DNA from: Octopus sinensis
Lineage: Eukaryota
DNA: 64,000 nt
Direction of reading: 5' to 3'
Assembly (NCBI RefSeq): GCF_006345805.1
Contig: NC_043007.1
Coordinates: 51,584,001-51,648,000 of the forward strand
Shown here: in pieces, positions 8,285 through 55,245 of the stretch
Numbering within the stretch: position 1 is the first letter of the stretch
How the letters are laid out: every line of letters starts with the position of its first letter
Notes under the pieces: model-generated
Database searches by the model: none
Seen by the model: only the letters and a program-made list of their open reading frames with translations
What the model was told of the DNA's origin: nothing
Translations under genes and position numbers: made by a program

Positions 8285-9735
8285 TTTTTTCTTCTTTTTT
8301 TATTTTTATAGCGTGCTTTCACTTCACTACCGAGCACAGCTCTGTGTGCCTTGGGTATGTGCTGTGATTTGTTGTGATGCTCTGATGGTTATTGTATGGA
8401 AAGTGTTCTGCGTAGGATGTGTGCAGTGCCTAGTAGTGCAATTTTCTGTATGTTATATGTGTTTATAAGTCCTGGTGTTTTTGTTATGTATTTGTCTGAA
8501 TATTTTTTTATCATGCCTAATGCACCTACTATGATAGGAATTGTTTCTGTTTTCAGATTCCACATTCTAGTTACCTCTATTTCCAGGTCTTTGTATTTTG
8601 AGAGTTTCTCCATTTCTTTTAGAGACACGTTGTCATCAGCCGGTATTGATACATCAATTAGAAAGCATTTTTTTTCTTCATGATCTCTGACAACTATATC
8701 TGGTCTGTTGGCCTTAATTTCTCTATCTGTGTGTATCGGCATATCCCAGAGTATGGTTGCTTTCTCGTTTTCTGTGACCTTTTCTGGTGTGTGCCTATAC
8801 CATCTTTTTTCTGTTGTTATTCCATAATGTTGGCATAGCTTCCAATGTATGTAGGTTCCAACTCTGTCATGTCTGTGAATATATACCTTCTTAGCCAAGA
8901 CTGGGCAGCTAGAGATAATATGATTTATTGTTTCTTGTCCATCTCCACATATTCTGCAGTTACTTGTAATATTTCTTTTCATTACATGTTTTTGGTAATT
9001 TCTGGTGGGGAGGCTTTGGTCTTGTGCTGCAATTAAAAATCCCTCTGTTTCTGCTTTGAGTCCTGAGCTTCTCAACCATTGCTGGGATTTTTCTTTGTCT
9101 ATTTCTTTTGCGTTTAGTTTAGTGCAGTATTTACCATGAAGGGGCTTTTCTTGCCATCGTTTTATCATGGTTCGTTGCTGTTCTATTTTTAGTTTGGATT
9201 TCATTTGTTTTATAGCTTTTGTTGTTTCTTCATCTTCTTCTTCTTCTTCTTCTTCATGTTTATTAGGTGGTATTATTTCTTGTTTGTATTTGTCAACTTC
9301 CTTAAATACTGAGAACAGTTTTTTGTTTTGCTCGTGTTTTGCCGCTATCTGGATCAGTTTTCCTTCCTTCTGAAGTAGATATTTTTGCAGTCCTATGGTG
9401 GTTATTTTATAGTAGTTTTCCAGCTGTATAAGGCCTCTACCACCTTCTATACGTTGTATATATAGTCTTTCTATGTCAGATTTTGGGTGATGCATCCTAG
9501 ATCCTGTCATTATTTTTCTTGTTTTCCTATCTATTTTGGTCAGTTCATTTCGTGTCCAGTTAAGGATATTGTAGCTGTAACTTATAACTGGGACAGCTAA
9601 AGTGTTGATACCTATTATCTTGTTTTTAGCATTGAGCTCTGTTTTTAGTATTGATCTAACTCGTCTATAATATTCTTTTTTTATTTTCTCTTTCATTTGT
9701 GTGTGTTGTGTCTTATCTAGTTCATGTTATTATCT
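8285..9735 (-). mobile_element. 5'-truncated R4/Dong-type non-LTR retrotransposon (RLE class) inserted in (TAA)n
   Basis: Contains the open 435-aa frame 8389-9696 plus a 3' UTR. (ATT)n tracts flank both sides (8193-8283 and ~9737-9800). Confidence 0.9.
8389..9696 (-). CDS. C-terminal part of non-LTR retrotransposon ORF: RT thumb, CCHC zinc knuckle, restriction-like endonuclease
   Basis: Motifs CRICGDGQETINHIISSC, RHDRVG and RPDIVVRD..CFLIDVSIP..EKLSKYKDL. The uninterrupted frame is probably a truncation product rather than a true start. Confidence 0.85.
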   Translation of the reverse strand: MKEKIKKEYYRRVRSILKTELNAKNKIIGINTLAVPVISYSYNILNWTRNELTKIDRKTRKIMTGSRMHHPKSDIERLYIQRIEGGRGLIQLENYYKITTIGLQKYLLQKEGKLIQIAAKHEQNKKLFSVFKEVDKYKQEIIPPNKHEEEEEEEDEETTKAIKQMKSKLKIEQQRTMIKRWQEKPLHGKYCTKLNAKEIDKEKSQQWLRSSGLKAETEGFLIAAQDQSLPTRNYQKHVMKRNITSNCRICGDGQETINHIISSCPVLAKKVYIHRHDRVGTYIHWKLCQHYGITTEKRWYRHTPEKVTENEKATILWDMPIHTDREIKANRPDIVVRDHEEKKCFLIDVSIPADDNVSLKEMEKLSKYKDLEIEVTRMWNLKTETIPIIVGALGMIKKYSDKYITKTPGLINTYNIQKIALLGTAHILRRTLSIQ

Positions 9736-12725: not shown

Positions 12726-12744
12726 TGTGTGTGTGTATGTGTGT

Positions 12745-13045
12745 GGAGGTGCAATGGCCCAGTGGTTATGCAGCGGACTCGCAGTCGGAGGATCGCGGTT
12801 TCGATTCTCTGACCGGGCGTTGTGTGTGTCTATTGAGCAAAACACCTAAAGCTCCACGAGGCTCCGGCAGGGGGTGGTGGCGACCCCTGTTGTACTCTTT
12901 CGCCCCAACTTTCTCTCACTCTTTCTTCTTGTTTCTTGAGTAACGCTGCGATGGACTGGCGTCCCGTCCAGCTGGGGTAAACACATACGCCATAGAAACC
13001 GGGAAACCGGACCCATGAGCCTGGCTAGAATTGAAAAGGGCGCAT
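12745..13045 (+). mobile_element. tRNA-derived SINE, family S3 head with an alternative tail
   Basis: Head gcaatggcccagtggtta-g-cagcggactcgc...ggtttcgattc is shared with 44088 and 54903. The tail gcgatggactggcgtcccgtccag...aaaccgggaaacc differs from those copies. Confidence 0.85.
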
Positions 13046-18063: not shown

Positions 18064-19721
18064 AATATATATATGATGCGTGTTAGTCATGAATTCTGCC
18101 GCCTTGCTGTCTACTTGCACTTTCTTACGACATAAAAGTCAGCTGTATGTACGGGACGTTAATGATTGCTTTACTCTCTTCCATGACAAACAGCAAGCAC
18201 AATATTTATTATTGTTCTCACAGACGAAAGAAATACATATTAAATGCGTGTATATGTATGCATGTGAAACTATACTATTAGTTAATATAGCACTATCAGT
18301 TACTAACGGAAACCTATATTTCTGATAGGAATGAACAATTCTAGTCTTGGGATCAGATCGTACAGGAGAAAAAACTCATTATGGTTTGGTTACCAGAACT
18401 TGGCGAAAACCTTATGTTTTGGTTGAAATAGTTATAAAGTAATAAATTAAAGAATATATTGAAAAACCACAATAGTAAATAAATAAATACATAAAAGAAT
18501 GAAGGATGTCTCACATTATGAACAAAATATAAAAAACAGAAAGTGAGGTCAAAATTATAATTTTGTGTGTGTGTGTTTTATGTATATATTCATAAGTTAT
18601 TAACTATTTTAAAATTTTATTTTTATTTAATAGAATGCTACTAACCTTTGTGGTAGAACTCCGTATACAGGGTGTATTTTATGTCTCATGTGCAGTTTCT
18701 ATGTAAGCGCTTTCGTTTCACAACTTTTCAAACACACGTGTTCCGAACTAATGTAATCTTTTCATTTAGTTTTTTTTTTTTTGTTATGGTGTTAACTATT
18801 TCCGGTTTACTTTACGGTTTAAAATTCTAATAAAATATTCTTCTTTTGCATTTTGTAGTTGACCATTTTCATCTTATATTTTGTAAAAAAAGGAATATTT
18901 TGAATTTTCCATTTGCACAAATGTGTTGATGCTTACCATCATTGAAAAGATGAACCTTTAGTTTGTTGTTTGTGCACATTTACATTACAGAGATGTGATG
19001 ACTGATGTAGAATTGAGAGGTATCGTTTGGCTCAATATATGATGTTGACAATAAATTTTATCTACGAGTTCAAGGCACAGCGATGGTGACAAATGCAACT
19101 CTTGTAATGAGGCACCTGGAATAAAAATCTTTACATTGTCCAGAACTACTTTTGATAATCATTTCCAAACCTATTTAATAGTGAACTGGAAAAGATTCTT
19201 TGCTGACTGCTTCATATTTCGGAACAAAATTAAGGAACATATTACAAGATTCCTTACATTAAAAAACAGCAGGATGTCTTCTTCTACAACATTGCTACCA
19301 AGCAAGTGGCTTGTCAAAATTAACTCTGAATGAAAAAGAGAAAAAGAAAACATATATATAGACATGTATGCACACATGTATGCACTCATACATACATGCA
19401 GTGTGGTGATGTCTATTTATCAAAAGTACGGTCATGGAGGACCGACAGCTACCGTTGTGATATCAAGCATATTCTCTCGTACACTTTGTGTAACAGGGTG
19501 TGTGGGCCAACCAGAGAACTCATAGTCATACATACATGCATACATACATACATACATACACATATACATACAAACATACGTACGTACATAGATACATATA
19601 TATACATACATCTTTGTATATATATATATATATATATATAATTCGCAAATACATACATATACATATAAACATATGCACATACGAGCATACAACATGCGTA
19701 CATACATTGATACATATATAT

Positions 19722-24299: not shown

Positions 24300-27699
<3,400 letters not shown>

Positions 27700-30294: not shown

Positions 30295-30403
30295 TGGCCT
30301 GCTCGCTTAGCCAGCGGGGTGGCGTTATTTCAAGGCTAAAACAGTGCGAAGCGCATTGTGACCAGCGATGTGTAGCAACATCTGATAGTCTGGTGGGTCA
30401 CGG

Positions 30404-30405
<2 letters not shown>
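30295..30405 (+). mobile_element. SINE family S3, 3' fragment
   Basis: ggcctgctcgcttagccagcggggtggcg...tgtgaccagcgatgtgtagcaacatctgatag, as in the 44088 and 54903 copies. Confidence 0.8.
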
Positions 30406-30441
<36 letters not shown>

Positions 30442-33050: not shown

Positions 33051-33670
33051 CACATCAAACAGGATATTCCATATAGTAATGCAAGGTGTATCTGTGCAAT
33101 AATTGTTGATTCGGAAATACATTAAATTCGGCTCAATGAACTTAAAAGCTTCCCCCAACAACAACAAAAAACATAATTACCCCTTAAAATAGATAAATAA
33201 TTGAATTACAAAGGCAATGTCAATCCTGCAACTGAGAACACCCAAGAAAAAATTAACAAAAATACTATTCCATTTATCAGTACACATAATCCAGGAGTGA
33301 CCAACATTTTCCACACTATAGAAAACAAAACTTACAATACCCTTCGAGACCCCAAAATGAAAATCTGGTCGAGAAAAACCTTATACAAAACAGTAAACGT
33401 CAACCAAAAAAACCTTATAAAACATCTCATGAGGACAAAAGTCACATCAGATAATAATTCAGAATCTTCTGGGAAGGACTGTGGTGATAATAGATGTAGA
33501 TCATATAACAAAACTTCAAATATTGGGACACTAGTTTCTATATAAATTTCAAAAGTAAATGCAGATATGAATTGCAAATTACAGAATCCCACATACTGCA
33601 AAACTTGCCTTAATTGCAAAGAGAATTTTATTGGCGAACTCATCAATACCCTTTACCAACGTTCGCGCCA
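33051..33670 (+). mobile_element. Penelope-like element PLE2, thumb/linker/GIY-YIG remnant (probable 3' tail extends to ~35950)
   Basis: HIKQDIPYSNARCICAII, IPFISTHNP, KDCGDNRC and NPTYCKTCLNCKENFIGE (GIY-YIG-like). Followed by a long non-coding, CT-rich tail ending in an HHR remnant. Confidence 0.75.
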
Positions 33671-42928: not shown

Positions 42929-43028
42929 NNNNNNNNNNNNNNNNNNNNNNNNNNNNNNNNNNNNNNNNNNNNNNNNNNNNNNNNNNNNNNNNNNNNNNNN
43001 NNNNNNNNNNNNNNNNNNNNNNNNNNNN
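42929..43028. other. Assembly gap (100 N)
   Basis: Run of N; the round size suggests a placeholder. Confidence 0.99.
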
Positions 43029-44066: not shown

Positions 44067-44087
44067 TATATACATACATATATGTGG

Positions 44088-44370
44088 GGGCGCAATGGCC
44101 CAGTGGTTAGGGCAGCGGACTCGCGGTTGTAGGATCGCGGTTTCAATTCCCAGACTGGGCGTTGTGAGTGTTTCTTGAGCGAAAACTCCTAAAAGCTCCA
44201 CGAGGCTCCGGCCGGGGGTGGTGATCCCTGCTGTAATCTTTCACCACTCTTTCTCTCACTCTTTCGTCTGTTGGCCTGCTCGCTTAGCCAACGGGGTGGC
44301 GTCATTTGAAGGCTAAAGCAATGCGAACGCATTGTGACCAGCGATGGTCTGGTCGGTCACGTGATATACA
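44088..44370 (+). mobile_element. SINE family S3
   Basis: ggcgcaatggcccagtggttagggcagcggactcgcgg...ggtttcaattcccagactgggcg, ending ggtcacgtgata. Confidence 0.9.
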
Positions 44371-47431: not shown

Positions 47432-48918
47432 AAGTGACCGTTTGCTGTAATAGCAGCAGTAGCAGAGACCGTTGTTTGCAGTAGTAGTAGTGATCGTGGT
47501 GGAATGGTGGTTGGAATTGTAGAATTCTTTTTTTCTTTTTGGATAACCAATATATGGTTTTAATGTTCCTGACCCAGGGTGTTTAAACTTGGTCCGAATT
47601 TTCTAATGAAATGAAGTTCTTTGTTATGACGTTGAGTAAAGGTGGCGTTGTTATTGAATTGGTAAAGTGGGAAAGTTGTAAATTTTGGGTTTTTATTCGA
47701 TGCACATCTGTCTATGTGGCCACTGACAGGTATTTTTCTGTATTCAAGATTCCTAATTTGGGATTTATGTACTGCCATCCTTTTTCGTAGATCGCTTTTT
47801 ATATGGCCAATATATTACCTATTGCACCCTGCGCATGTTATCCTGTAAATTAAGTTTTCCGATACACAGGTGAAGTTTGTTCTGATGGTAAAATGACGAC
47901 CTTGTTCTAATGTGTATTCCGAACCTTCTAATAAGATGACACAGATGCCGCAGTTGGGCTTTCCACACTTTTCAACTGTTGATTTTGTAGTTGTTATTGG
48001 GTGCAGTTTAGCCTGGGTTAAAATCTTCTTTAAGGATTTTGGTTGCCGTTTACTTTTTTCGTTGGTGTACGTTTGGAGAATTCGGTCTCCCTTGGGTAGG
48101 GCTGTGCTTTGGAATATGGAGTTGAAGGCCTCATTGTTAAGTGGGTTGTGTGTAGAGATGTAGGGAAGGGTTTTTAATTTTTCTTCTTTTTTTTTTTTGG
48201 TTTTGGTTGTCTCAGGTCTTCTGTATTTAATTTAACTGCTCGTTGGATTGTATTGTCTATTTGGGGTTGTGGATAATTCCTATTTATGAGAGTAGTTCTG
48301 AGTTCCTGGAGACGTGTGTGTCGGGTGTTTGTGTCTGATATTATGGTGCAAATCCTTTTGGTTCAACAGAAAGGGATATTCATTCTTGTGTGTCTTGGGT
48401 GGCATGAGTCAAATAGTAAGTACTGCTTTGAGTCTGTCGGTTTATAATAGATATCCGTCTCTATTTTGTTGCCGACTTTCTTAAATGAGGATATCTAGAA
48501 ATGGTAGTTTTTCCTGGTTATGTTCTATCGTGAATTGGATGTTTTCATTAATTCCATTTGTAGTGTTTTAAATTCCTCAAGTTTTTCTATACTTTCATCC
48601 CAGAGGCTGACGCAGTCGTCGAGATATTTTTTCCAGTTGTTCTGGATATAGGTGGAGAAAGAGTTTCCATATTTCTCAAGTGTTTTCTGGTAAAGTATTA
48701 TTTCGAGGTAGCCCATTACTAGGTTGGCAAGAGAAGGCGCAGTACGTGTACCCATGACTGTTCCTGATCTTTGTCTGTAGTAGTCATTATTAAATATAAA
48801 GTAATTGTTTTCTAAGATAAATCTCAATCCTTCTATTATGAGTTCTTCATTTATGCGAGTTGGAAATTCAAAGGAGTAGTTGTTTAGCCAGAAAGTGATC
48901 GCTTCTATTCCTAGAGAC
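46851..48918 (-). mobile_element. Penelope-like element PLE3 (RT + GIY-YIG remnants, triplet-rich 3' UTR, HHR-remnant terminus)
   Basis: ORF 48525-48827 has FILENNYFIFN..YRQRSGTVMGTRTAPSLANL..KYLDD. GIY-YIG region NLIYRITCAGC..YIG and ORF 47560-47778 (VHKSQIR...ELHFIRKF..SLN). TA-rich flanks on both ends. Confidence 0.9.
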
Positions 48919-48974
48919 TATATATTATTCACATAGAAGTACAATAAGAAGCTTCCAAATGGCAGTAGAAAACT

Positions 48975-49549
48975 CAAAACCTTGATCACCTTGACCGATC
49001 ATTCTATCGGGCGTCCATTTGACACCGCTGGTCACAGCACGCTGTCCACTCCTCTCTGGATTCCGCCTTCCTCATCCACGTGATCCCAATCGCCCTCCTA
49101 AAATCGTAACTCTACTGTTGTGAAGGCCTTCCGATTGGTCACTTCCGCTCGCGCGGGTACCACTCGACAACTGCGCAGGTCCACCGATTATCGGTGAACT
49201 GGGTGACGTGCCCAGTCCATCTAAACTTGCTGCGTGTATATTCTACGATGACATTCCTCACGCCGGACTTCTCTCTGATGACCTCGCTACTGATGTGCTC
49301 TCTCAACGAGATTCCAAGCATTGACCTCTCCATGGCTCTTTGAATTGTTAACAATCTCTGCTCTTCTCTCTTTGTTGTAGCCCATGTTTCACTACCATAC
49401 AACATTGCAGGTAGAACTGTGCTATTGATGAGGTTAGTGCGGGTGATCCTGTCCAACCTTCCCTTGAGCACATCCCTTCTTCTGGTTGTCGGCAGTGATG
49501 AAATAGAGGAGATAAAGGAATATGTCTACCTGGGACAGGAAGGGAATAT
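48975..49549 (-). mobile_element. 5'-truncated RTE LINE 3' end with a short 5' inversion
   Basis: ORF 49139-49471 has VLPAMLYGSETW...QRAMERSMLG...RWTGHV..DNRWT. The upstream EIEEIKEYVYLGQE segment lies inverted on the + strand (49487-49549). Confidence 0.85.
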
Positions 49550-50488: not shown

Positions 50489-51418
50489 TATACATAAATA
50501 CACACACATGCAACATACACATACGTACATGTAACGCAGAACACGCACACCTCAAAAACGCACGCGTGCGCGTGCACATACGCTCTCCCGCGTGCTCTCT
50601 CTCTCTCACACACACATTCAATGTGTGTGCGTGTGTATGTGAGTGTGTCTGTGTGTATGCATGTGTGTGCCTGTGTGTGGTTGCCCTAGATAGATGACAC
50701 TTGTCAGAAAGATACATAAATGTAATTTGTAGAACTTTATACACACTGGATTTCGGTCGAGCGTTCTGTATCTAGTTCTAGAAATTGTGTTTTGTAAACG
50801 ACGAGGCTATGCTGATGATATTGCAGATGTTTGCGTATCCATATACGTATATATTAACAAGTGAAACGAATTAGTACAAAGGTAATCGTTTTATAATTCG
50901 TATATTTTCATTTGTCTTGCTTATTTTTGCACTTTGGTTTTTTGCTGAAGTTTTTCTTGAGAACACATTCTTCGTGGAAAATGGCGATTTTGACGTCTAT
51001 ATCTAGCATACTGGCTGTCTACTTTCAGTAGTCAGTCCTCTAAATTTTATATGCAAAAAAATTTTTAATGTTCGGATTTTTAAGAATATGCTAGGCCATT
51101 GGTTTTAATGGATTAATATCAATTTCTACCCTTATTTAATTATATATATATATATATAAGTTTAACAATTAAGGATAATCTCTTAATAAGGGATCTTAAC
51201 AAGAAGTTATCGGGTAGCTAGCGTGAAAACCTCATAAAAGAAAAGAATTCGAAAATAATTTTTTTCTTTTGAACAAATTAATTATATCTATATTGTATAG
51301 AGGGCATTATTACACATAAATGCCTCACACTAGGAGGGACAAAGTCATTACTACCAAAATTATACTAATCATACCCAAATGCAGTTTTTCAAAGCAAGAC
51401 ATTTAAAAAAATGAATTT

Positions 51419-51477
51419 AGTTCTGTATCACCGTGATTTCACATTCAACTTTACGTCTAATGATCGTCAGCAGAACT
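51419..51477 (-). ncRNA. Type I hammerhead ribozyme A1
   Basis: 5'-AGUUCUG CUGACGA UCAUUAGAC-GUAAA-GUUGAAUGU GAAA UCAC-G-GUGA UA^CAGAACU-3'. 7-bp stem I, intact core, AUA triplet. Confidence 0.85.
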
Positions 51478-51899
51478 GATTCTGAATACATCATAAATAA
51501 ACTACCAACCTTACGTAGCGAAGACAAACAGACAACTGCTCACTCCGGCCAAGCACATGGAATGTTTATAATCATATATCCGGTAAATGGCGGGCTTTTT
51601 TACGAACTGCATGTCGGGTAATGAAAAGTATTTCGGAATAAGTTTAACAATTAAGGATAATCTCTTAATAAGGGATCTTAACAAGAAGTTATCGGTTAGC
51701 TAGCGTGAAAACCTCATAAAAGAAAAGAATTCGAAAATAATTTTTTTTTTTTGAACAAATTAATTATATCTATATTGTATAGAGGGCATTATTACACATA
51801 AATGCCTCACACTAGGAGGACAAAGTCATTACTACCAAAATTATACTAATCATACCCAAATGCAGTTTTTCAAAGCAAGACATTTAAAAAAATGAATTT

Positions 51900-51958
51900 A
51901 GTTCTGTATCACCGTGATTTCACATTCAACTTTACGTCTAATGATCGTCAGCAGAACT
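51900..51958 (-). ncRNA. Type I hammerhead ribozyme A2
   Basis: Identical to A1. Confidence 0.85.
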
Positions 51959-52382
51959 GATTCTGAATACATCATAAATAAACTACCAACCTTACGTAGC
52001 GAAGACAAACAGACAACTGCTCACTCCGGCCAAGCACATGGAATGTTTATAAATCATATATCCGGTAAATGGCGGGCTTTTTTACGAACTGCATGTCGGG
52101 TAATGAAAAGTATTTCGGAATAAGTTTAACAATTAAGGATAATCTCTTAATAAGGGATCTTAACAAGAAGTTATCGGGTAGCTAGCGTGAAAACCTCATA
52201 AAAGAAAAGAATTCGAAAATAATTTTTTTCTTTTGAACAAATTAATTATATCTATATTGTATAGAGGGCATTATTACACATAAATGCCTCACACTAGGAG
52301 GGACAAAGTCATTACTACCAAAATTATACTAATCATACCCAAATGCAGTTTTTCAAAGCAAGACATTTAAAAAAATGAATTT

Positions 52383-52441
52383 AGTTCTGTATCACCGTGA
52401 TTTCACATTCAACTTTACGTCTAATGATCGTCAGCAGAACT
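52383..52441 (-). ncRNA. Type I hammerhead ribozyme A3
   Basis: Identical to A1. Confidence 0.85.
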
Positions 52442-53267
52442 GATTCTGAATACATCATAAATAAACTACCAACCTTACGTAGCGAAGACAAACAGACAAC
52501 TGCTCACTCCGGCCAAGCACATGGAATGTTTATAAATCATATATCCGGTAAATGGCGGGCTTTTTTACGAACTGCATGTCGGGTAATGAAAAGTATTTCG
52601 GAATAAGTTTAACAATTAAGGATAATCTCTAATAAGGGATCTTAACAAGAAGTTATCGGGTAGCTAGCGTGAAAACCTCATAAAAGAAAAGAATTCGAAA
52701 ATAATTTTTTTTTTTGAACAAATTAAATATCTATTTGTATAGAGGGCATTATTACACATAAATGCCTCACACTAGGAGGGACAAAGTCATTACTACCAAA
52801 ATTATACTAATCATACCCAAATGCAGTTTTTCAAAGCAAGACATTTAAAAAAATGAATTTAGTTCTGCTTTGAAAAACTGCATTTGGGTATGATTAGTAT
52901 AATTTTGGTAGTAATGACTTTGTCCCTCCTAGTGTGAGGCATTTATGTGTAATAATGCCCTCTATACAATATAGATATAATTAATTTGTTCAAAAGAAAA
53001 AAATTATTTTCGAATTCTTTTCTTTTATGAGGTTTTCACGCTAGCTACCCGATAACTTCTTGTTAAGATCCCTTATTAAGAGATTATCCTAATAATTGTT
53101 AAACTTATTCCGAATACTTTTCATTACCCGACATGCAGTTCGTAAAAAAGCCCGCATTTACCGGATATATGATTTATAAACATTCCATGTGCTTGGCCGG
53201 AGTGAGCAGTTGTCTGTTGTCTTCGCTAAGGTTAAGGTGGTAGTTTATTTATGATGTATTCAGAATC

Positions 53268-53328
53268 AGTTCTGCTGACGATCATTAGACGTAAAGTGAA
53301 TGTGATGAAATCACGGTGATACAGAACT
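53268..53328 (+). ncRNA. Hammerhead A4 (variant copy in the inverted arm)
   Basis: Same stems I and III and the same core. Stem II has a 1-nt deletion and a 3-nt insertion. Confidence 0.65.
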
Positions 53329-53446
53329 AAATCATTTTTTTAAATGTCTTGCTTTGAAAAACTGCATTTGGGTATGATTAGTATAATGGTAGTAATGACT
53401 TTGTCCCTCCTAGTGTGAGGCATTTATGTGTAATAATGCCCTCTAT

Positions 53447-53481
<35 letters not shown>

Positions 53482-53621
53482 ACAATCAAGGAACGGCCAT
53501 GATAGGCCATTCACCCACTAGAAATAACAGCCAAAGCTTCAACCGCAAATAATTTTAGGTCAGATATTACCTTGGCAGGGTCGGAAATGCCTCGTGAAAA
53601 TATCTGTTCCGACTTGGCTAT

Positions 53622-53724
53622 TTCTTGCTGAAGAATCTGAGGGCCTATGGAAGATTGGCTTGATTTAATTTAATCAGGTTAGTTTACCATTAAACAGCAG
53701 ATGAAACGGTGCATCGTACAAGAA
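53622..53724 (+). ncRNA. Type I hammerhead ribozyme B1 with a 58-nt loop-2 insertion
   Basis: UUCUUG CUGAAGA AUCUG-(58 nt)-CAGAU GAAA CGGUGCAUCG UA^CAAGAA. Confidence 0.85.
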
Positions 53725-54106
53725 TTACAGGGTAAATGTTTTTTAAATTTTCTCCTGTTTACGGAATTAATTATTTGCGGTTGAAGCTTTGGCTGTTATT
53801 TCTAGTGGGTGAATGGCCTATCATGGCCGTTCCTTGATTGTTGATGTTGAAGTTAAAAATGGTCTATGACTATTTAATTTTTTCCCACTAGGCCGCTGGT
53901 GGCAAAAGGAATTCTACAAAATTTTTTTTGCCACCCTATATTGATTAATTATGAATTTTCTGGTTAATTCCGTAATGGAATCGACGGCTTATATTTATTT
54001 GCTGCCGATAAATTTGGCGCGAGTGCGACGATTTGAAAATTTTAGGTCAGATATTACCTTGGCAGGGTCGGAAATGCCTCGTGAAAATATCTGTTCCGAC
54101 TTGGCT

Positions 54107-54213
54107 ATTTCTTGCTGAAGAATCTGAGGGCCTATGGAAGATTGGCTTGATTTAATTTAATCAGGTTAGTTTACCATTAAACAGCAGATGAAACGGTGCA
54201 TCGTACAAGAAAT
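54107..54213 (+). ncRNA. Type I hammerhead ribozyme B2
   Basis: Same as B1 but with an 8-bp stem I (AUUUCUUG/CAAGAAAU). Confidence 0.87.
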
Positions 54214-54432
54214 TACAGGGTAAATGTTTTTTTAAATTTTCTCTGTTTACGGAATTAATTTTATTGCGGTTGAAGCTTTGGCTGTATTTCTAGTGGGTGA
54301 ATGGCCTATCATGGCCGTTCCTTGATTGTTGATGTTGAACTTTAAAAAGGTCTATGACTATTTAATTTTTTCCCACTAGGCCGCTGGTGGCAAAAGGAAT
54401 TCTACAAAATTTCTTTTGCCACCCTATATTGA

Positions 54433-54465
<33 letters not shown>

Positions 54466-54854
54466 ACTGTAAATGTAATATGTGACATTTATTCGGTAGC
54501 CAAGATAAAACTCTGAGTTCCGGATGCCGAGGTGGAAATCCACGCCACCATCTCTTCAGTTATCCGGCCATCGGAAAACCGCTATTGAAAATGACCATTA
54601 TACATATATTAGCGGTCATTCGAATATCTCTTTTGTCTAAATAGCGATCAATAACACAGTAATTTCCCTTTGTATAACGGTCATTTTTCATAGCGTTTTT
54701 CCGATGGCCGGATAACTGAAGAGATGGTGGCGTGGATTTCTACGTCGGCATCCGAAACTCAGAGTTTTATCTTGGCTACCGAATAATTGTAACATATTAC
54801 ATTTACAGATAAATTCGAGATCTCTTTCTTTCTTTTGTTTTCTTACCGTTTTTA

Positions 54855-54858
<4 letters not shown>
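54466..54858 (+). mobile_element. Element C: pLTR-like HHR element with an inverted 5' copy (~137-bp-arm palindrome)
   Basis: Arms at 54467-54603 and 54672-54808 with a ~68-bp spacer. (TA)n flanks. Confidence 0.8.
54706..54777 (+). ncRNA. Type I hammerhead ribozyme C
   Basis: GGCCGGAUAA CUGAAGA [13-bp stem II with one mismatch] C GAAA CUC-A-GAG UU^UUAUCUUGGCU. One extra C lies before GAAA. The inverted copy (54498-54569, - strand) has GGAA instead of GAAA. Confidence 0.75.
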
Positions 54859-54902
<44 letters not shown>

Positions 54903-54906
<4 letters not shown>

Positions 54907-55200
54907 CGTGATCACCGTGACCGACCAGGCTATCAGATGTTGCTACACATCGCTGGTCACAATGCGCTTCGCATTGTTTTAACCTTCAAATGGCGCCACC
55001 CCGCTGGCTAAGCGAGCAAGCCAACAGAAGAAAGTTGTGGCGAAAGAGTACAGCAGGGATCGCCACCACCCCTTGCCGGAGCCTCGTAGAGCTTTAGGTG
55101 TTTTTCCTCAATAAACACTCACAAGGCCTGATCTGGTAATCGAAACCGCGATCCTACGACTGCGAGTCCGCTGCCCTAACTACTGGGTCATTGCGGCCTC
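54903..55200 (-). mobile_element. SINE family S3
   Basis: Reverse complement of the 44088 family. Confidence 0.9.
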
Positions 55201-55245
55201 CACACACAACACACCACACACACACACACACACACCACACACACA

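What the first reader, a model, noticed from the sequence alone, without database searches (positions are those of the whole stretch)
51156..52867. 482-bp tandem array with an intact hammerhead ribozyme in every monomer: candidate cephalopod non-LTR retrozyme (family A)
Seen: 3.5 near-identical 482-483-bp units. Each carries on the - strand AGUUCUG-CUGACGA-[stem II CAUUAGAC/GUUGAAUG]-GAAA-UCAC G GUGA-UA-CAGAACU. That gives a 7-bp stem I extended past a 1x2 internal loop by GAAU/AUUC, an intact CUGANGA/GAAA core and an AUA cleavage triplet. There is no credible ORF. Established: tandem monomers each with a type I HHR are the architecture of animal non-LTR retrozymes and ribozyme satellites (newt satellite 2, Schistosoma Sm-alpha, cricket pDo500). 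Their multimeric transcripts self-cleave into monomers that can circularise. Inference: stem III has only a 1-nt loop, so it probably folds as a dimer between neighbouring copies, releasing ~482-nt RNAs that may circularise and be mobilised by a Penelope-type RT. Caveat: the 10.1-11.1 pair is U-U rather than the usual G-C.
Basis: partly seen in the sequence, partly recalled or inferred. Interest (0 to 1): 0.92.

Follow-up and report, generated by a model that had tools for sequence, protein, structure and literature searches.

The report
Tandem repeats carrying hammerhead ribozymes
This is a short tandem array of a non-coding ~482-bp repeat carrying a self-cleaving hammerhead ribozyme motif, a "non-LTR retrozyme" of a kind already known in many animals; its insertion junctions give some evidence on how such elements are copied into DNA.

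Summary
A 482-bp repeat (3.56 units, 99% identical) occupies 51156-52867. A complete type I hammerhead (HHR) motif on the minus strand spans each of the three unit junctions. A strict HHR descriptor matched in 0 of 300 shuffled windows.

- The array continues head-to-head as an inverted, 5'-truncated 1.24-unit copy (52866-53460).
- An unrelated ~488-bp repeat next door (53478-54440) has its own type I HHR and the same head-to-head layout.
- Every outer end merges into (TA)n, which is the 3' tail of a SINE.
- A decayed Penelope-like element (RT plus GIY-YIG) lies 2.2 kb away.

The 5' end of the minus-strand array falls 0-2 nt from the predicted cleavage site. Helix III is marginal as a hairpin (-0.2 kcal/mol) but strong as an intermolecular duplex (-13.9), which supports a dimeric ribozyme. 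The U·U pair at 10.1/11.1 has a cleaving precedent in axolotl.

Weak points:
- Rfam Hammerhead_1 scores only 14-16 bits against a threshold of 34.
- No independent copies were found, so covariation, transcription and cleavage are untested.
- The cephalopod origin could not be verified.

Verdict: a new member of a known kind, of moderate interest.

The parts
51156..52867 (-). Family A direct array: 3.56 units of 478-483 nt. The RNA sense is on the minus strand.
52383..52441 (-). Family A type I hammerhead, copy 1. Predicted cleavage lies between 52390 (A17) and 52389 (C1.1).
   Evidence: Exact descriptor hit; cleavage phasing.
51900..51958 (-). Family A hammerhead, copy 2. Predicted cleavage at 51907|51906.
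51419..51477 (-). Family A hammerhead, copy 3. Predicted cleavage at 51426|51425. This copy is the best Rfam match to Hammerhead_1 at 14.4 bits, below the gathering score of 34.
52866..52867 (.). Head-to-head junction. The 5' end of the minus-strand array (C1.1 of CAGAACU, the first base after the predicted cleavage site) meets the 5' end of the inverted copy (monomer position 30). The two share a 2-nt TG overlap.
   Evidence: Sequence read; alignment; BLAST coordinates.
52866..53460 (+). Family A inverted, 5'-truncated copy of 1.24 units (monomer positions 30-483, then 1-143). It is 96.5-97.2% identical to the direct units.
   Evidence: (I1-I20).
53268..53328 (+). Fourth family A hammerhead. 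It is degenerate: a 1-nt deletion and a 3-nt insertion break stem II, and a 1-nt deletion falls in the stem I extension.
51141..51158 (.). (TA)n at the left outer end. The array's 3' end (monomer position 270, ...AAACTTAT) merges into it.
53450..53479 (.). (AT)15 between families A and B. The 3' end of the inverted A copy (...ACAATATA) and the 3' end of the inverted B piece (...GTTGAT) both merge into it.
53478..53554 (-). Family B inverted 77-nt piece, 100% complementary to 53769-53845.
   Evidence: I9.
53551..54440 (+). Family B direct array: 1.82 units of ~488 nt. It is unrelated in sequence to family A.
   Evidence: (D9, D10, D12).
53622..53724 (+). Family B type I hammerhead, copy 1. It has CUGAAGA, a long stem II (68 nt, closed by AUCUG/CAGAU), GAAA, and a helix III ACGG-UGCA-UCGU that is fully palindromic. 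Cleavage is UA^C at 53718|53719.
   Evidence: (Rfam Hammerhead_1 at 15.9 bits).
54107..54213 (+). Family B hammerhead, copy 2. Stem I is 8 bp.
54438..54465 (.). (TA)14 at the 3' end of the family B array (...TTAATTAT merges into it).
47563..48917 (-). Decayed, 5'-truncated Penelope-like element. It reads, in order: RT fragment, CX4CxxC linker (CGKPNCGIC), then a GIY-YIG endonuclease with two internal cysteines and two downstream histidines. Stops and frameshifts are present.
   Evidence: GIY-YIG E = 1.5e-4; RVT_1 E about 1e-3. Domain order and motifs follow PMC8557442.
54903..55215 (-). tRNA-derived SINE whose 3' end (...GGTCGGTCACGGTGATCACGGTGAT) runs into the (AT)n at 54858-54903. The whole 51141-54903 block therefore sits in this SINE's (TA)n tail.

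Best explanation
Region 51156-53460 is one insertion of a non-autonomous, non-coding retroelement of the non-LTR retrozyme class (family A). A second, unrelated retrozyme (family B, 53478-54440) lies beside it. Both sit in the (TA)n tail of a SINE.

Proposed mechanism, with the status of each step:
1. The minus strand is transcribed as a multimer. This is inferred; no promoter or RNA data were available.
2. Hammerheads of neighbouring units pair through their palindromic helix III into a dimeric hammerhead. They cut after A17 (AUA^C) and release 482-483-nt RNAs that start with CAGAACU. The motif and the thermodynamics are shown here; the cleavage itself is inferred.
3. The linear RNA can be circularised by a host RtcB-type ligase. 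This rests on the literature only.
4. A reverse transcriptase copies the RNA at a nicked (TA)n site. It is most likely from a Penelope-like element, because those elements favour (TA)n and build tandem-plus-inverted insertions. The TA-repeat DNA end primes on any AU-rich stretch of a template with no fixed 3' end. Both DNA ends prime (twin priming), and the two cDNAs meet head-to-head.

What the architecture shows:
- All outer ends merge into (TA)n with TA microhomology.
- The inner 5' ends lie at positions 1, 30, 51 and 321 after the cleavage site.
- The main array stops 0-2 nt from the predicted cleavage site. That is what run-off on a hammerhead-cleaved RNA would give.
For: - Array and motif.
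- Beyond chance: 0 of 300 shuffles matched a strict descriptor, against 5 hits from 2 unrelated families in the window.
- On short slices, Rfam's best hit for both families, and their only hammerhead hit, is Hammerhead_1.
- The hammerhead fold of family A is within 1.2 kcal/mol of the MFE. Stems I and II form in the MFE of the whole circular monomer.
- Sense RNA folds at -121.4 kcal/mol, z = -5.41, with 0 of 100 shuffles as good. The antisense z is -2.61.
- Helix III hairpin is -0.2 (A) and -1.2 (B) kcal/mol. The homodimer is -13.9 and -19.5. Two family A hammerheads co-fold into the dimeric form.
- A U·U pair at the base of helix II occurs in axolotl HHR_Amex2, which cleaves 22% in 1 h as a monomer and much more efficiently as a dimer (PMC7229834).
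- A long helix II (7-8 bp), an unpaired base at the 5' end of stem II and a palindromic helix III are the published traits of Penelope-element hammerheads (PMC4209133).
- The head-to-head inverted 5'-truncated copy plus tandem units plus (TA)n target matches the published Penelope insertion pattern (PMC8557442). It recurs in A and B, and in a third neighbour, C.
- The array's 5' end lies 0-2 nt from the cleavage site. Three of four inner 5' ends fall within 51 nt after the site, binomial p about 0.004, computed post hoc.
- A Penelope-like remnant lies 2.2 kb away.
Against: - Rfam Hammerhead_1 scores are 14.4 and 15.9 bits, far below the gathering score of 34. Nothing was found at gathering thresholds or at E <= 10 on the 2.7-kb slice.
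- G10.1-C11.1 is replaced by U·U, and stem II has an A·G mismatch.
- The three intact copies are identical, so there is no covariation. The one diverged copy has its hammerhead broken, with 3 of about 10 changes inside the motif. There is therefore no sign of purifying selection at this locus.
- No other copy of A or B exists in the 64 kb. None turned up in the protein collection or in two metagenome scans, so multicopy, dispersed status is unproven.
- Family B's inner ends are not at its cleavage site.
- Twin priming also occurs with APE-type LINEs, and the local RTE-tailed SINEs also end in (TA)n. The layout therefore does not uniquely identify a Penelope enzyme.
- The Penelope remnant is decayed, and its Pfam matches fall just below or well below the gathering scores.
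Confidence: 0.72

Rival explanations
1. The element is a retrozyme, but it is mobilised by the RTE-type LINE of this genome rather than by a Penelope-like element. In this reading hammerhead cleavage exposes a 3' end (...UCACGGUGAUA) that mimics the 9-nt tail repeat of the RTE and its SINE, and the RTE enzyme copies it.
For: - The 10-mer TCACGGTGAT occurs 6 times in the window, against 0.14 expected. Four are helix III plus U16.1 of family A. Two form the tandem 3' terminus of the SINE at 54902-54920.
- The last ~60 nt of the SINE is homologous to the 3' end of the RTE fragment at 48960-49525.
- Three SINE copies end in AT-rich microsatellite, so RTE-driven insertions here are also tied to (TA)n.
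- LINE twin priming gives the same head-to-head layout. This point rests on established knowledge of L1 inversions and was not tested here.
Against: - None of the four outer 3' junctions of A or B lies at the cleaved 3' end. They sit at monomer-internal AU-rich sites, so tail recognition was not used in these insertions.
- Family B has no such tail match.
- A shared 10-mer between a 310-nt SINE and a 482-nt monomer has an expected count of about 0.3 if position is ignored. The argument therefore rests on a post hoc positional coincidence.
- Published work links these elements to Penelope-like elements, not to RTE.
Confidence: 0.15
2. The array is an inert satellite or fossil. It was once generated from a ribozyme-bearing element, or amplified locally by unequal crossing-over, but it is now neither transcribed nor cleaved, and the hammerhead is a decaying relic.
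For: - There is a single locus in 64 kb.
- The one diverged copy has a broken hammerhead.
- The motif departs from consensus (U·U and A·G) and fails the Rfam threshold.
- No RNA evidence was obtainable.
Against: - The direct units are 99-100% identical, so the insertion is young.
- The sense RNA is far more structured than shuffles or the antisense strand.
- The 5' end at the cleavage site indicates that cleaved RNA existed when the array formed.
- Head-to-head partial copies with microhomology at every end point to reverse transcription rather than unequal crossing-over as the origin.
Confidence: 0.1
3. The hammerhead is a chance motif, or the palindrome is an assembly artefact such as an unremoved long-read adapter.
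For: Rfam scores are below threshold. The window contains a scaffold gap, so it comes from a draft-quality assembly.
Against: - 0 of 300 shuffles matched, and two unrelated families carry the motif in the sense orientation predicted by the layout.
- The junction is asymmetric (position 1 against position 30), and the arms differ by 3%. That is unlike an adapter palindrome.
- The N gap is at 42929-43028, 8 kb away.
Confidence: 0.03

Closest known systems
Axolotl (Ambystoma mexicanum) non-LTR retrozyme Rtz_353 with HHR_Amex2 (Cervera & de la Pena 2020, PMC7229834)
   Same: - Tandem non-coding repeat with a type I hammerhead.
- U·U mismatch at the base of helix II.
- Weak helix III.
- Far better cleavage as a dimer.
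- Low GC and a highly self-paired RNA.
   Different: - The axolotl unit is 350 bp; this one is 482 bp.
- The axolotl element has tens of thousands of copies; copy number here is unknown.
- Helix II here is 8 bp rather than short.
- The host here is an unidentified invertebrate-like genome.
- There is no sequence similarity.
Mussel (Mytilus galloprovincialis) non-LTR retrozymes, 350-390 bp (PMC7229834)
   Same: If the host here is a cephalopod, both hosts are molluscs. Both are tandem repeats with type I hammerheads that lack the archetypal loop 1 / loop 2 signature. Both co-occur with Penelope-like elements.
   Different: According to the literature, mussel and most invertebrate hammerheads have a stable helix III and cleave as monomers. 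Families A and B here have palindromic, dimer-type helix III, closer to the amphibian and Penelope style.
[quoted passage not shown] 2017)
   Same: Long helix II (7-8 bp), an unpaired base at the 5' end of stem II, a small palindromic helix III and action as dimers. The insertions are tandem plus inverted and go into microsatellites.
   Different: Penelope-element hammerheads have a short helix I (4-5 bp) and sit in the repeats of a ~3-kb coding element. Here helix I is 7 + 4 bp and the unit encodes nothing. No sequence similarity to the local Penelope remnant was found.
Newt satellite 2, Schistosoma Sm-alpha and cricket pDo500 ribozyme satellites
   Same: Tandem monomers, each with a type I hammerhead, transcribed as multimers. 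The newt ribozyme is active only as a dimer (Forster 1988, cited).
   Different: Those hammerheads match the Rfam Hammerhead_1 consensus: helix II of 4 bp and G10.1-C11.1. Families A and B score only 14-16 bits against it.

Membership tests
Hammerhead ribozyme, type I | Core C3-U4-G5-A6-N7-G8-A9 between helices I and II | tested here: met
   CUGACGA in family A and CUGAAGA in family B.
Hammerhead ribozyme, type I | Core G12-A13-A14 followed by the A15.1-U16.1 pair, with H17 (not G) at the cleavage site | tested here: met
   GAAA ... UA^C in both families.
Hammerhead ribozyme, type I | Three helices around the core, with helix I open (type I topology) | tested here: met
   Family A: helix I 7 bp (+4), helix II 8 bp, helix III 4-5 bp. 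Family B: 6-8 bp, a long helix II, and 4 bp. The fold is within 1.2 kcal/mol of the MFE in A and 0.5 kcal/mol in B.
Hammerhead ribozyme, type I | G10.1-C11.1 pair at the base of helix II (near-invariant, not absolute) | tested here: not met
   Family A has U·U and family B has A-U. A U·U variant that still cleaves is published for axolotl HHR_Amex2.
Hammerhead ribozyme, type I | Score at or above the gathering threshold of Rfam RF00163 (34 bits) | tested here: not met
   14.4 bits for A and 15.9 bits for B, and only on short slices. There was no hit in the whole-window scan. The model expects a 4-bp helix II.
Hammerhead ribozyme, type I | Compensatory changes in the helices among diverged copies | tested here: inconclusive
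   The three family A copies are identical and the two family B copies are identical within the helices. The only diverged copy is broken. No outside copies could be fetched.
Hammerhead ribozyme, type I | Site-specific self-cleavage | not testable with these tools
   There is only indirect support: the array's 5' end lies 0-2 nt from the predicted site.
Non-LTR retrozyme (Cervera & de la Pena 2020; Li et al. 2026) | Tandem repeat units of roughly 150-450 bp (51-972 bp in the 2026 survey) | tested here: met
   482 bp x 3.56 units (A) and 488 bp x 1.82 units (B).
Non-LTR retrozyme (Cervera & de la Pena 2020; Li et al. 2026) | A type I hammerhead in every repeat unit | tested here: met
   All three unit junctions of the direct A array carry one, as do both family B units. 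The inverted A copy carries a degenerate one.
Non-LTR retrozyme (Cervera & de la Pena 2020; Li et al. 2026) | No coding capacity and no LTR, PBS or PPT | tested here: met
   The longest ORF is 69 aa with no homologue. No terminal repeats exist other than the tandem units.
Non-LTR retrozyme (Cervera & de la Pena 2020; Li et al. 2026) | Low GC (< 50%) and a stable, highly self-paired RNA | tested here: met
   GC is 33% (A) and 37% (B). For A, z = -5.41 and 67% of bases are paired in the circular fold.
Non-LTR retrozyme (Cervera & de la Pena 2020; Li et al. 2026) | Dispersed, multicopy presence in the genome | not testable with these tools
   Only 64 kb is available. There is no second locus in it, and no eukaryotic genome collection could be searched by DNA.
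Non-LTR retrozyme (Cervera & de la Pena 2020; Li et al. 2026) | Expression as monomeric linear and circular RNA | not testable with these tools
   No RNA data were accessible.
Non-LTR retrozyme (Cervera & de la Pena 2020; Li et al. 2026) | Co-occurrence with Penelope-like elements in the same genome | tested here: met
   An RT, CX4CxxC, GIY-YIG remnant lies at 47563-48917. The Pfam scores are weak: 22.4 bits against a 22.6 cutoff, and 19.4 against 29.6.

The most novel reading that the evidence does not exclude
This locus may preserve the integration junctions of non-LTR retrozymes, whose mobilisation mechanism the literature calls unknown. On this reading:
- cDNA synthesis starts from both ends of a cut (TA)n microsatellite, by TA microhomology at arbitrary AU-rich sites of a template with no fixed 3' end.
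- It runs through several units.
- It stops at the 5'-OH end made by hammerhead cleavage.
That would make hammerhead-cleaved linear or multimeric RNA, rather than a closed circle, the template of the final cDNA. It would also be the first junction-level evidence for a Penelope-type (or, alternatively, RTE-type) enzyme acting on a retrozyme.

A further possibility is that helix III of family A doubles as a mimic of the RTE/SINE 3' tail.
Probability: 0.25. Interest if true: 0.65.

Novelty: new member of a known kind. Interest (0 to 1): 0.42.

Why it matters
Non-LTR retrozymes are known from corals, mussels, insects, fish and amphibians. The papers searched name no cephalopod example, so this would extend the catalogue if the host is confirmed.

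The junctions are the more useful result. Reviews state that animal retrozymes show no motif that reveals which retrotransposon moves them. A 2026 preprint argues for Penelope-like elements from phylogeny alone. At this locus two unrelated retrozymes, and a third decayed neighbour, share one layout: head-to-head arms, (TA)n microhomology at every outer end, and one array ending at the ribozyme cut site.

That yields a concrete, genome-wide testable prediction about the template and the enzyme. It is one locus, so it is a lead and not a result.

Tried and rejected
- Rfam at gathering thresholds on the whole window gave nothing. At E <= 10 on 50900-53600 it returned only spurious plant microRNA hits on the palindromic junction at 52800-52904, plus noise. 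The hammerhead surfaced only on ~100-nt slices and below threshold.
- I looked for other genomic copies through ORF products of the monomer. An exact look-up found none and the homology search found no candidate.
- Two metagenome scans with 22-nt and 25-nt hammerhead strings of A and B gave 0 hits.
- Host identification failed:
  - An intact LINE ORF (8389-9696) matched best an unnamed Logan contig from SRR7158634 (92%) and a contig of GCA_024449705.1 (77%).
  - Named hits were at most 56% identical (coral, fish, shrimp).
  - The accessions are not mentioned in the paper library.
  - An RTE ORF hit turtles and nematodes, consistent with horizontally transferred RTE.
- Family C (foldback at 54461-54814) was considered as a third hammerhead carrier. 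Only one arm has CUGAAGA...GAAA; the other arm has GGAA. The MFE does not form the motif, and Rfam gives no hammerhead hit. It is not counted as a ribozyme.
Stop-free segments were scanned instead.
- Snap-back copying of the first cDNA was considered as the origin of the inverted arm. It is less likely than twin priming for three reasons: the arm is shorter than the array, it ends in (TA)n at a different monomer position, and it does not share the variants of the adjacent unit.
Full report

Tandem Repeats Finder reports one long-period array in the window: 51156-52867, period 482, 3.6 copies, 99% matches. On the minus strand the 59-nt string AGUUCUG-CUGACGA-U-CAUUAGAC-GUAAA-GUUGAAUG-U-GAAA-UCACGGUGA-UA-CAGAACU occurs exactly three times: 52441-52383, 51958-51900 and 51477-51419. 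Phased at the predicted cleavage site (after A17 of AUA), the units are 478, 483 and 481 nt plus a 270-nt partial unit.

Stem I is 7 bp, extended by GAAU/AUUC across a C x AA internal loop. The cores are CUGACGA and GAAA. The cleavage triplet is AUA, and positions 10.1/11.1 are U·U. Stem II is 8 bp but contains an A·G mismatch and a G·U pair.

I wrote a type I descriptor and ran it on 300 dinucleotide-preserving shuffles of the window. With stem I >= 6, stem II >= 4 and stem III >= 4, no shuffle produced a hit. The real window produced five hits. The longest ORF in the array is 69 aa and has no relative among 5.8 billion proteins.

**2.

- **Inverted continuation.** The array does not stop at 52867. 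From 52866 to 53460 the same repeat continues in the opposite orientation, as monomer positions 30-483 and then 1-143, at 96.5-97.2% identity. This copy carries a fourth hammerhead (53268-53328, plus strand). Its stem II is disrupted by a 1-nt deletion and a 3-nt insertion.
- **Second family.** Immediately to the right, 53478-54440 holds a second repeat of ~488 bp, family B. It has no detectable similarity to family A. It consists of 1.82 direct units on the plus strand, preceded by a 77-nt inverted piece (I9). It has its own type I hammerhead at 53622-53724 and 54107-54213. The motif has a stem I of 6-8 bp, CUGAAGA, a 68-nt stem II closed by AUCUG/CAGAU, GAAA, helix III ACGG-UGCA-UCGU, and cleavage at UA^C. 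Two unrelated repeats of the same size class, each with a hammerhead on its sense strand, are the strongest argument that the motif is not a coincidence.
- **(TA)n at every outer end.** The outer ends of both families merge into (TA)n at 51141-51158, 53450-53479 and 54438-54465. A third neighbour, family C (a foldback at 54461-54814), lies between (TA)n at 54438-54465 and (AT)n at 54858-54903.
- **SINE tail.** That last microsatellite is the 3' tail of a tRNA-derived SINE (55215-54903, minus strand). Other copies of this SINE in the window also end in AT-rich microsatellite. The whole block 51141-54903 is therefore a nest of insertions in one SINE tail.
- **Penelope-like remnant.** At 47563-48917 (minus strand) lies a decayed Penelope-like element. 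It reads, in order: an RT fragment with YLDD, FTIEHNQEKLPFLDILI and IYYKPTDSKQYLLFDSCHP; a CGKPNCGIC linker; and a GIY-YIG domain (LIYRITCAGCNR-stop-YIGHIKSDLRKRMAVHKSQI...GH). Pfam GIY-YIG gives E = 1.5e-4 (22.4 bits, cutoff 22.6), and RVT_1 gives E about 1e-3. RT followed by a C-terminal GIY-YIG with internal CC...H...H defines canonical EN+ Penelope-like elements. The CX2-5CxxC linker is typical of the Neptune and Nematis clades (PMC8557442).

**3. How good is the ribozyme?**

Rfam gives no hit at gathering thresholds, and none at E <= 10 on a 2.7-kb slice. On ~100-nt slices, Hammerhead_1 (RF00163) is the top hit for both families and their only hammerhead hit, but at 14.4 and 15.9 bits against a threshold of 34. 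The alignments show why. The model expects a 4-bp helix II and a 3-bp helix III, and it treats the long helices here as insertions. Membership by the Rfam criterion therefore fails, while every core position is present.

The hammerhead fold of family A costs -9.0 kcal/mol against an MFE of -10.2. Stems I and II appear in the MFE of the complete circular monomer.

Because the segment AUCAC-G-GUGAU is palindromic, two copies pair at -13.9 kcal/mol. Two 59-nt hammerheads co-fold into the classical dimeric form at -32.1, against 2 x -10.2 for two monomers. Family B behaves the same way, at -1.2 against -19.5. This agrees with the literature. Most metazoan type I hammerheads have an unstable, palindromic helix III and cleave as dimers in tandem transcripts (PMC4209133; PMC7229834).

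The U·U pair has a direct precedent. [quoted passage not shown] It cleaves 22% in one hour as a monomer and much more efficiently as a dimer. A long helix II with an unpaired base at its 5' end is described as the signature of hammerheads in Penelope-like elements.

**4. The RNA.**

The sense-strand monomer folds at -121.4 kcal/mol (z = -5.41, 0 of 100 shuffles as stable). The antisense strand gives z = -2.61. GC is 33%. Both values fit the published description of retrozyme RNAs.

**5. The junctions.**

In both families the sense strands point outward from a central head-to-head junction. All four outer 3' ends sit at different internal positions of the monomer. Each ends in ...TAT...ATA or ...GAT fused to (TA)n. 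This is the expected result if a TA-repeat DNA end primes reverse transcription by microhomology on a template with no fixed 3' end, such as a circle or a multimer.

The inner 5' ends, counted from the cleavage site, lie at positions 1 (A, minus strand), 30 (A, plus strand), 51 (B, minus strand) and 321 (B, plus strand). The long family A array ends at C1.1 of CAGAACU, at most 2 nt from the predicted cut. A 2-nt TG overlap links it to the inverted arm.

The chance that one given end falls within +/-2 nt of the site is about 1%. For any of four ends it is about 4%. The chance that three of four fall in the first 51 nt is about 0.004. Both figures are post hoc.

I read this as twin-primed, target-primed reverse transcription whose cDNAs ran to, or nearly to, the 5' end of hammerhead-cleaved RNA. 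Tandem units plus an inverted 5'-truncated copy, and a preference for (TA)n, are described for Penelope-like elements. I therefore favour a Penelope-type enzyme as the mobiliser. This step is inferred, not shown.

**6. An unexplained coincidence, and a rival.**

The 10-mer TCACGGTGAT occurs six times in the window (0.14 expected). Four are helix III plus U16.1 of family A. The other two form the tandem 3' terminus of the SINE at 54902-54920. The SINE's last ~60 nt is homologous to the 3' end of an RTE-type LINE fragment at 48960-49525. After cleavage, the family A RNA would therefore end in the same bases as the RTE/SINE tail.

This could mean that the RTE enzyme can also use the retrozyme RNA. 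LINE twin priming gives the same head-to-head layout. Against this rival, none of the observed 3' junctions is at the cleaved end, family B has no such match, and a shared 10-mer is not rare if its position is ignored. I keep it as a rival at 0.15.

**7. Comparison with what is known, and novelty.**

By the published definitions this is a non-LTR retrozyme. Those definitions require tandem units with a type I hammerhead in each, no LTR, PBS or PPT, low GC, and co-occurrence with Penelope-like elements. The unit size lies within the 51-972 bp range of the 2026 survey.

Expression, circularity, self-cleavage and multicopy status could not be tested. None of the papers searched mentions a cephalopod retrozyme. 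I could not confirm that the window is from a cephalopod.

My verdict is a new member of a known kind. The ribozyme itself would not surprise a specialist. The junction anatomy is a modest but concrete lead on an open question, namely which enzyme and which RNA form mobilise these elements.

Noticed in passing
window 53478-54440: A second, unrelated ~488-bp tandem repeat (family B). It has its own type I hammerhead on the plus strand (53622-53724 and 54107-54213), a fully palindromic helix III (ACGGUGCAUCGU) and a 68-nt stem II. A 77-nt inverted piece precedes it.
   Followed up: yes
window 54461-54814: A foldback element (family C) with 144-nt arms at 92% identity and a 66-nt spacer, lying between two (TA)n tracts like A and B. 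The right arm has a hammerhead-like CUGAAGA...GAAA...UU motif in the sense orientation. The left arm has GGAA instead, and Rfam gives no hammerhead hit. It may be a decayed third insertion of the same type.
   Followed up: partly
window 47563-48917 (minus strand): A decayed, 5'-truncated Penelope-like element: RT fragment, CX4CxxC linker, then a GIY-YIG endonuclease with CC..H..H, with stops and frameshifts. Weaker Penelope-like similarity appears at 33225-33497 (+) and 19151-19291 (+).
   Followed up: partly
window 54903-55215 (minus strand); also 12731-12914, 30295-30407 and 44083-44365 (plus strand): A tRNA-derived SINE family whose 3' ~60 nt is homologous to the 3' end of an RTE LINE fragment (48960-49525, minus strand). 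The copies end in ...GGTCACG(G)TGAT followed by AT-rich microsatellite. The (TA)n that hosts families A, B and C is this SINE's tail.
   Followed up: partly
window 54902-54920 against 51427-51436, 51908-51917, 52391-52400 and 53311-53320: The terminal 10-mer of the SINE/RTE tail (TCACGGTGAT, tandem x2) is identical to helix III plus U16.1 of the family A hammerhead. Those are the last bases of the RNA after self-cleavage. There are 6 hits against 0.14 expected. The meaning is unknown.
   Followed up: partly
window 52800-52904: Rfam plant microRNA models (MIR1512, MIR2863, MIR828) score 38-46 bits here, below their thresholds. This is the hairpin formed by the head-to-head junction of family A, not a microRNA gene.
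   Followed up: yes
window 8389-9696 (minus strand) and 25638-27334 (plus strand): Two copies of a LINE C-terminal region (RVT_1 and zf-RVT). The first is an intact 435-aa ORF. Its nearest relatives are an unnamed Logan contig from SRR7158634 (92%) and a contig of GCA_024449705.1 (77%). Named hits are about 55% identical (coral, fish, shrimp). This did not identify the host.
   Followed up: partly
window 42929-43028: A run of 100 N (scaffold gap), 8 kb from the arrays.
   Followed up: yes
whole window: Microsatellite density is very high: 109 Tandem Repeats Finder rows in 64 kb, mostly TA, TG/CA, TATG and trinucleotides. GC is 36%.
   Followed up: no
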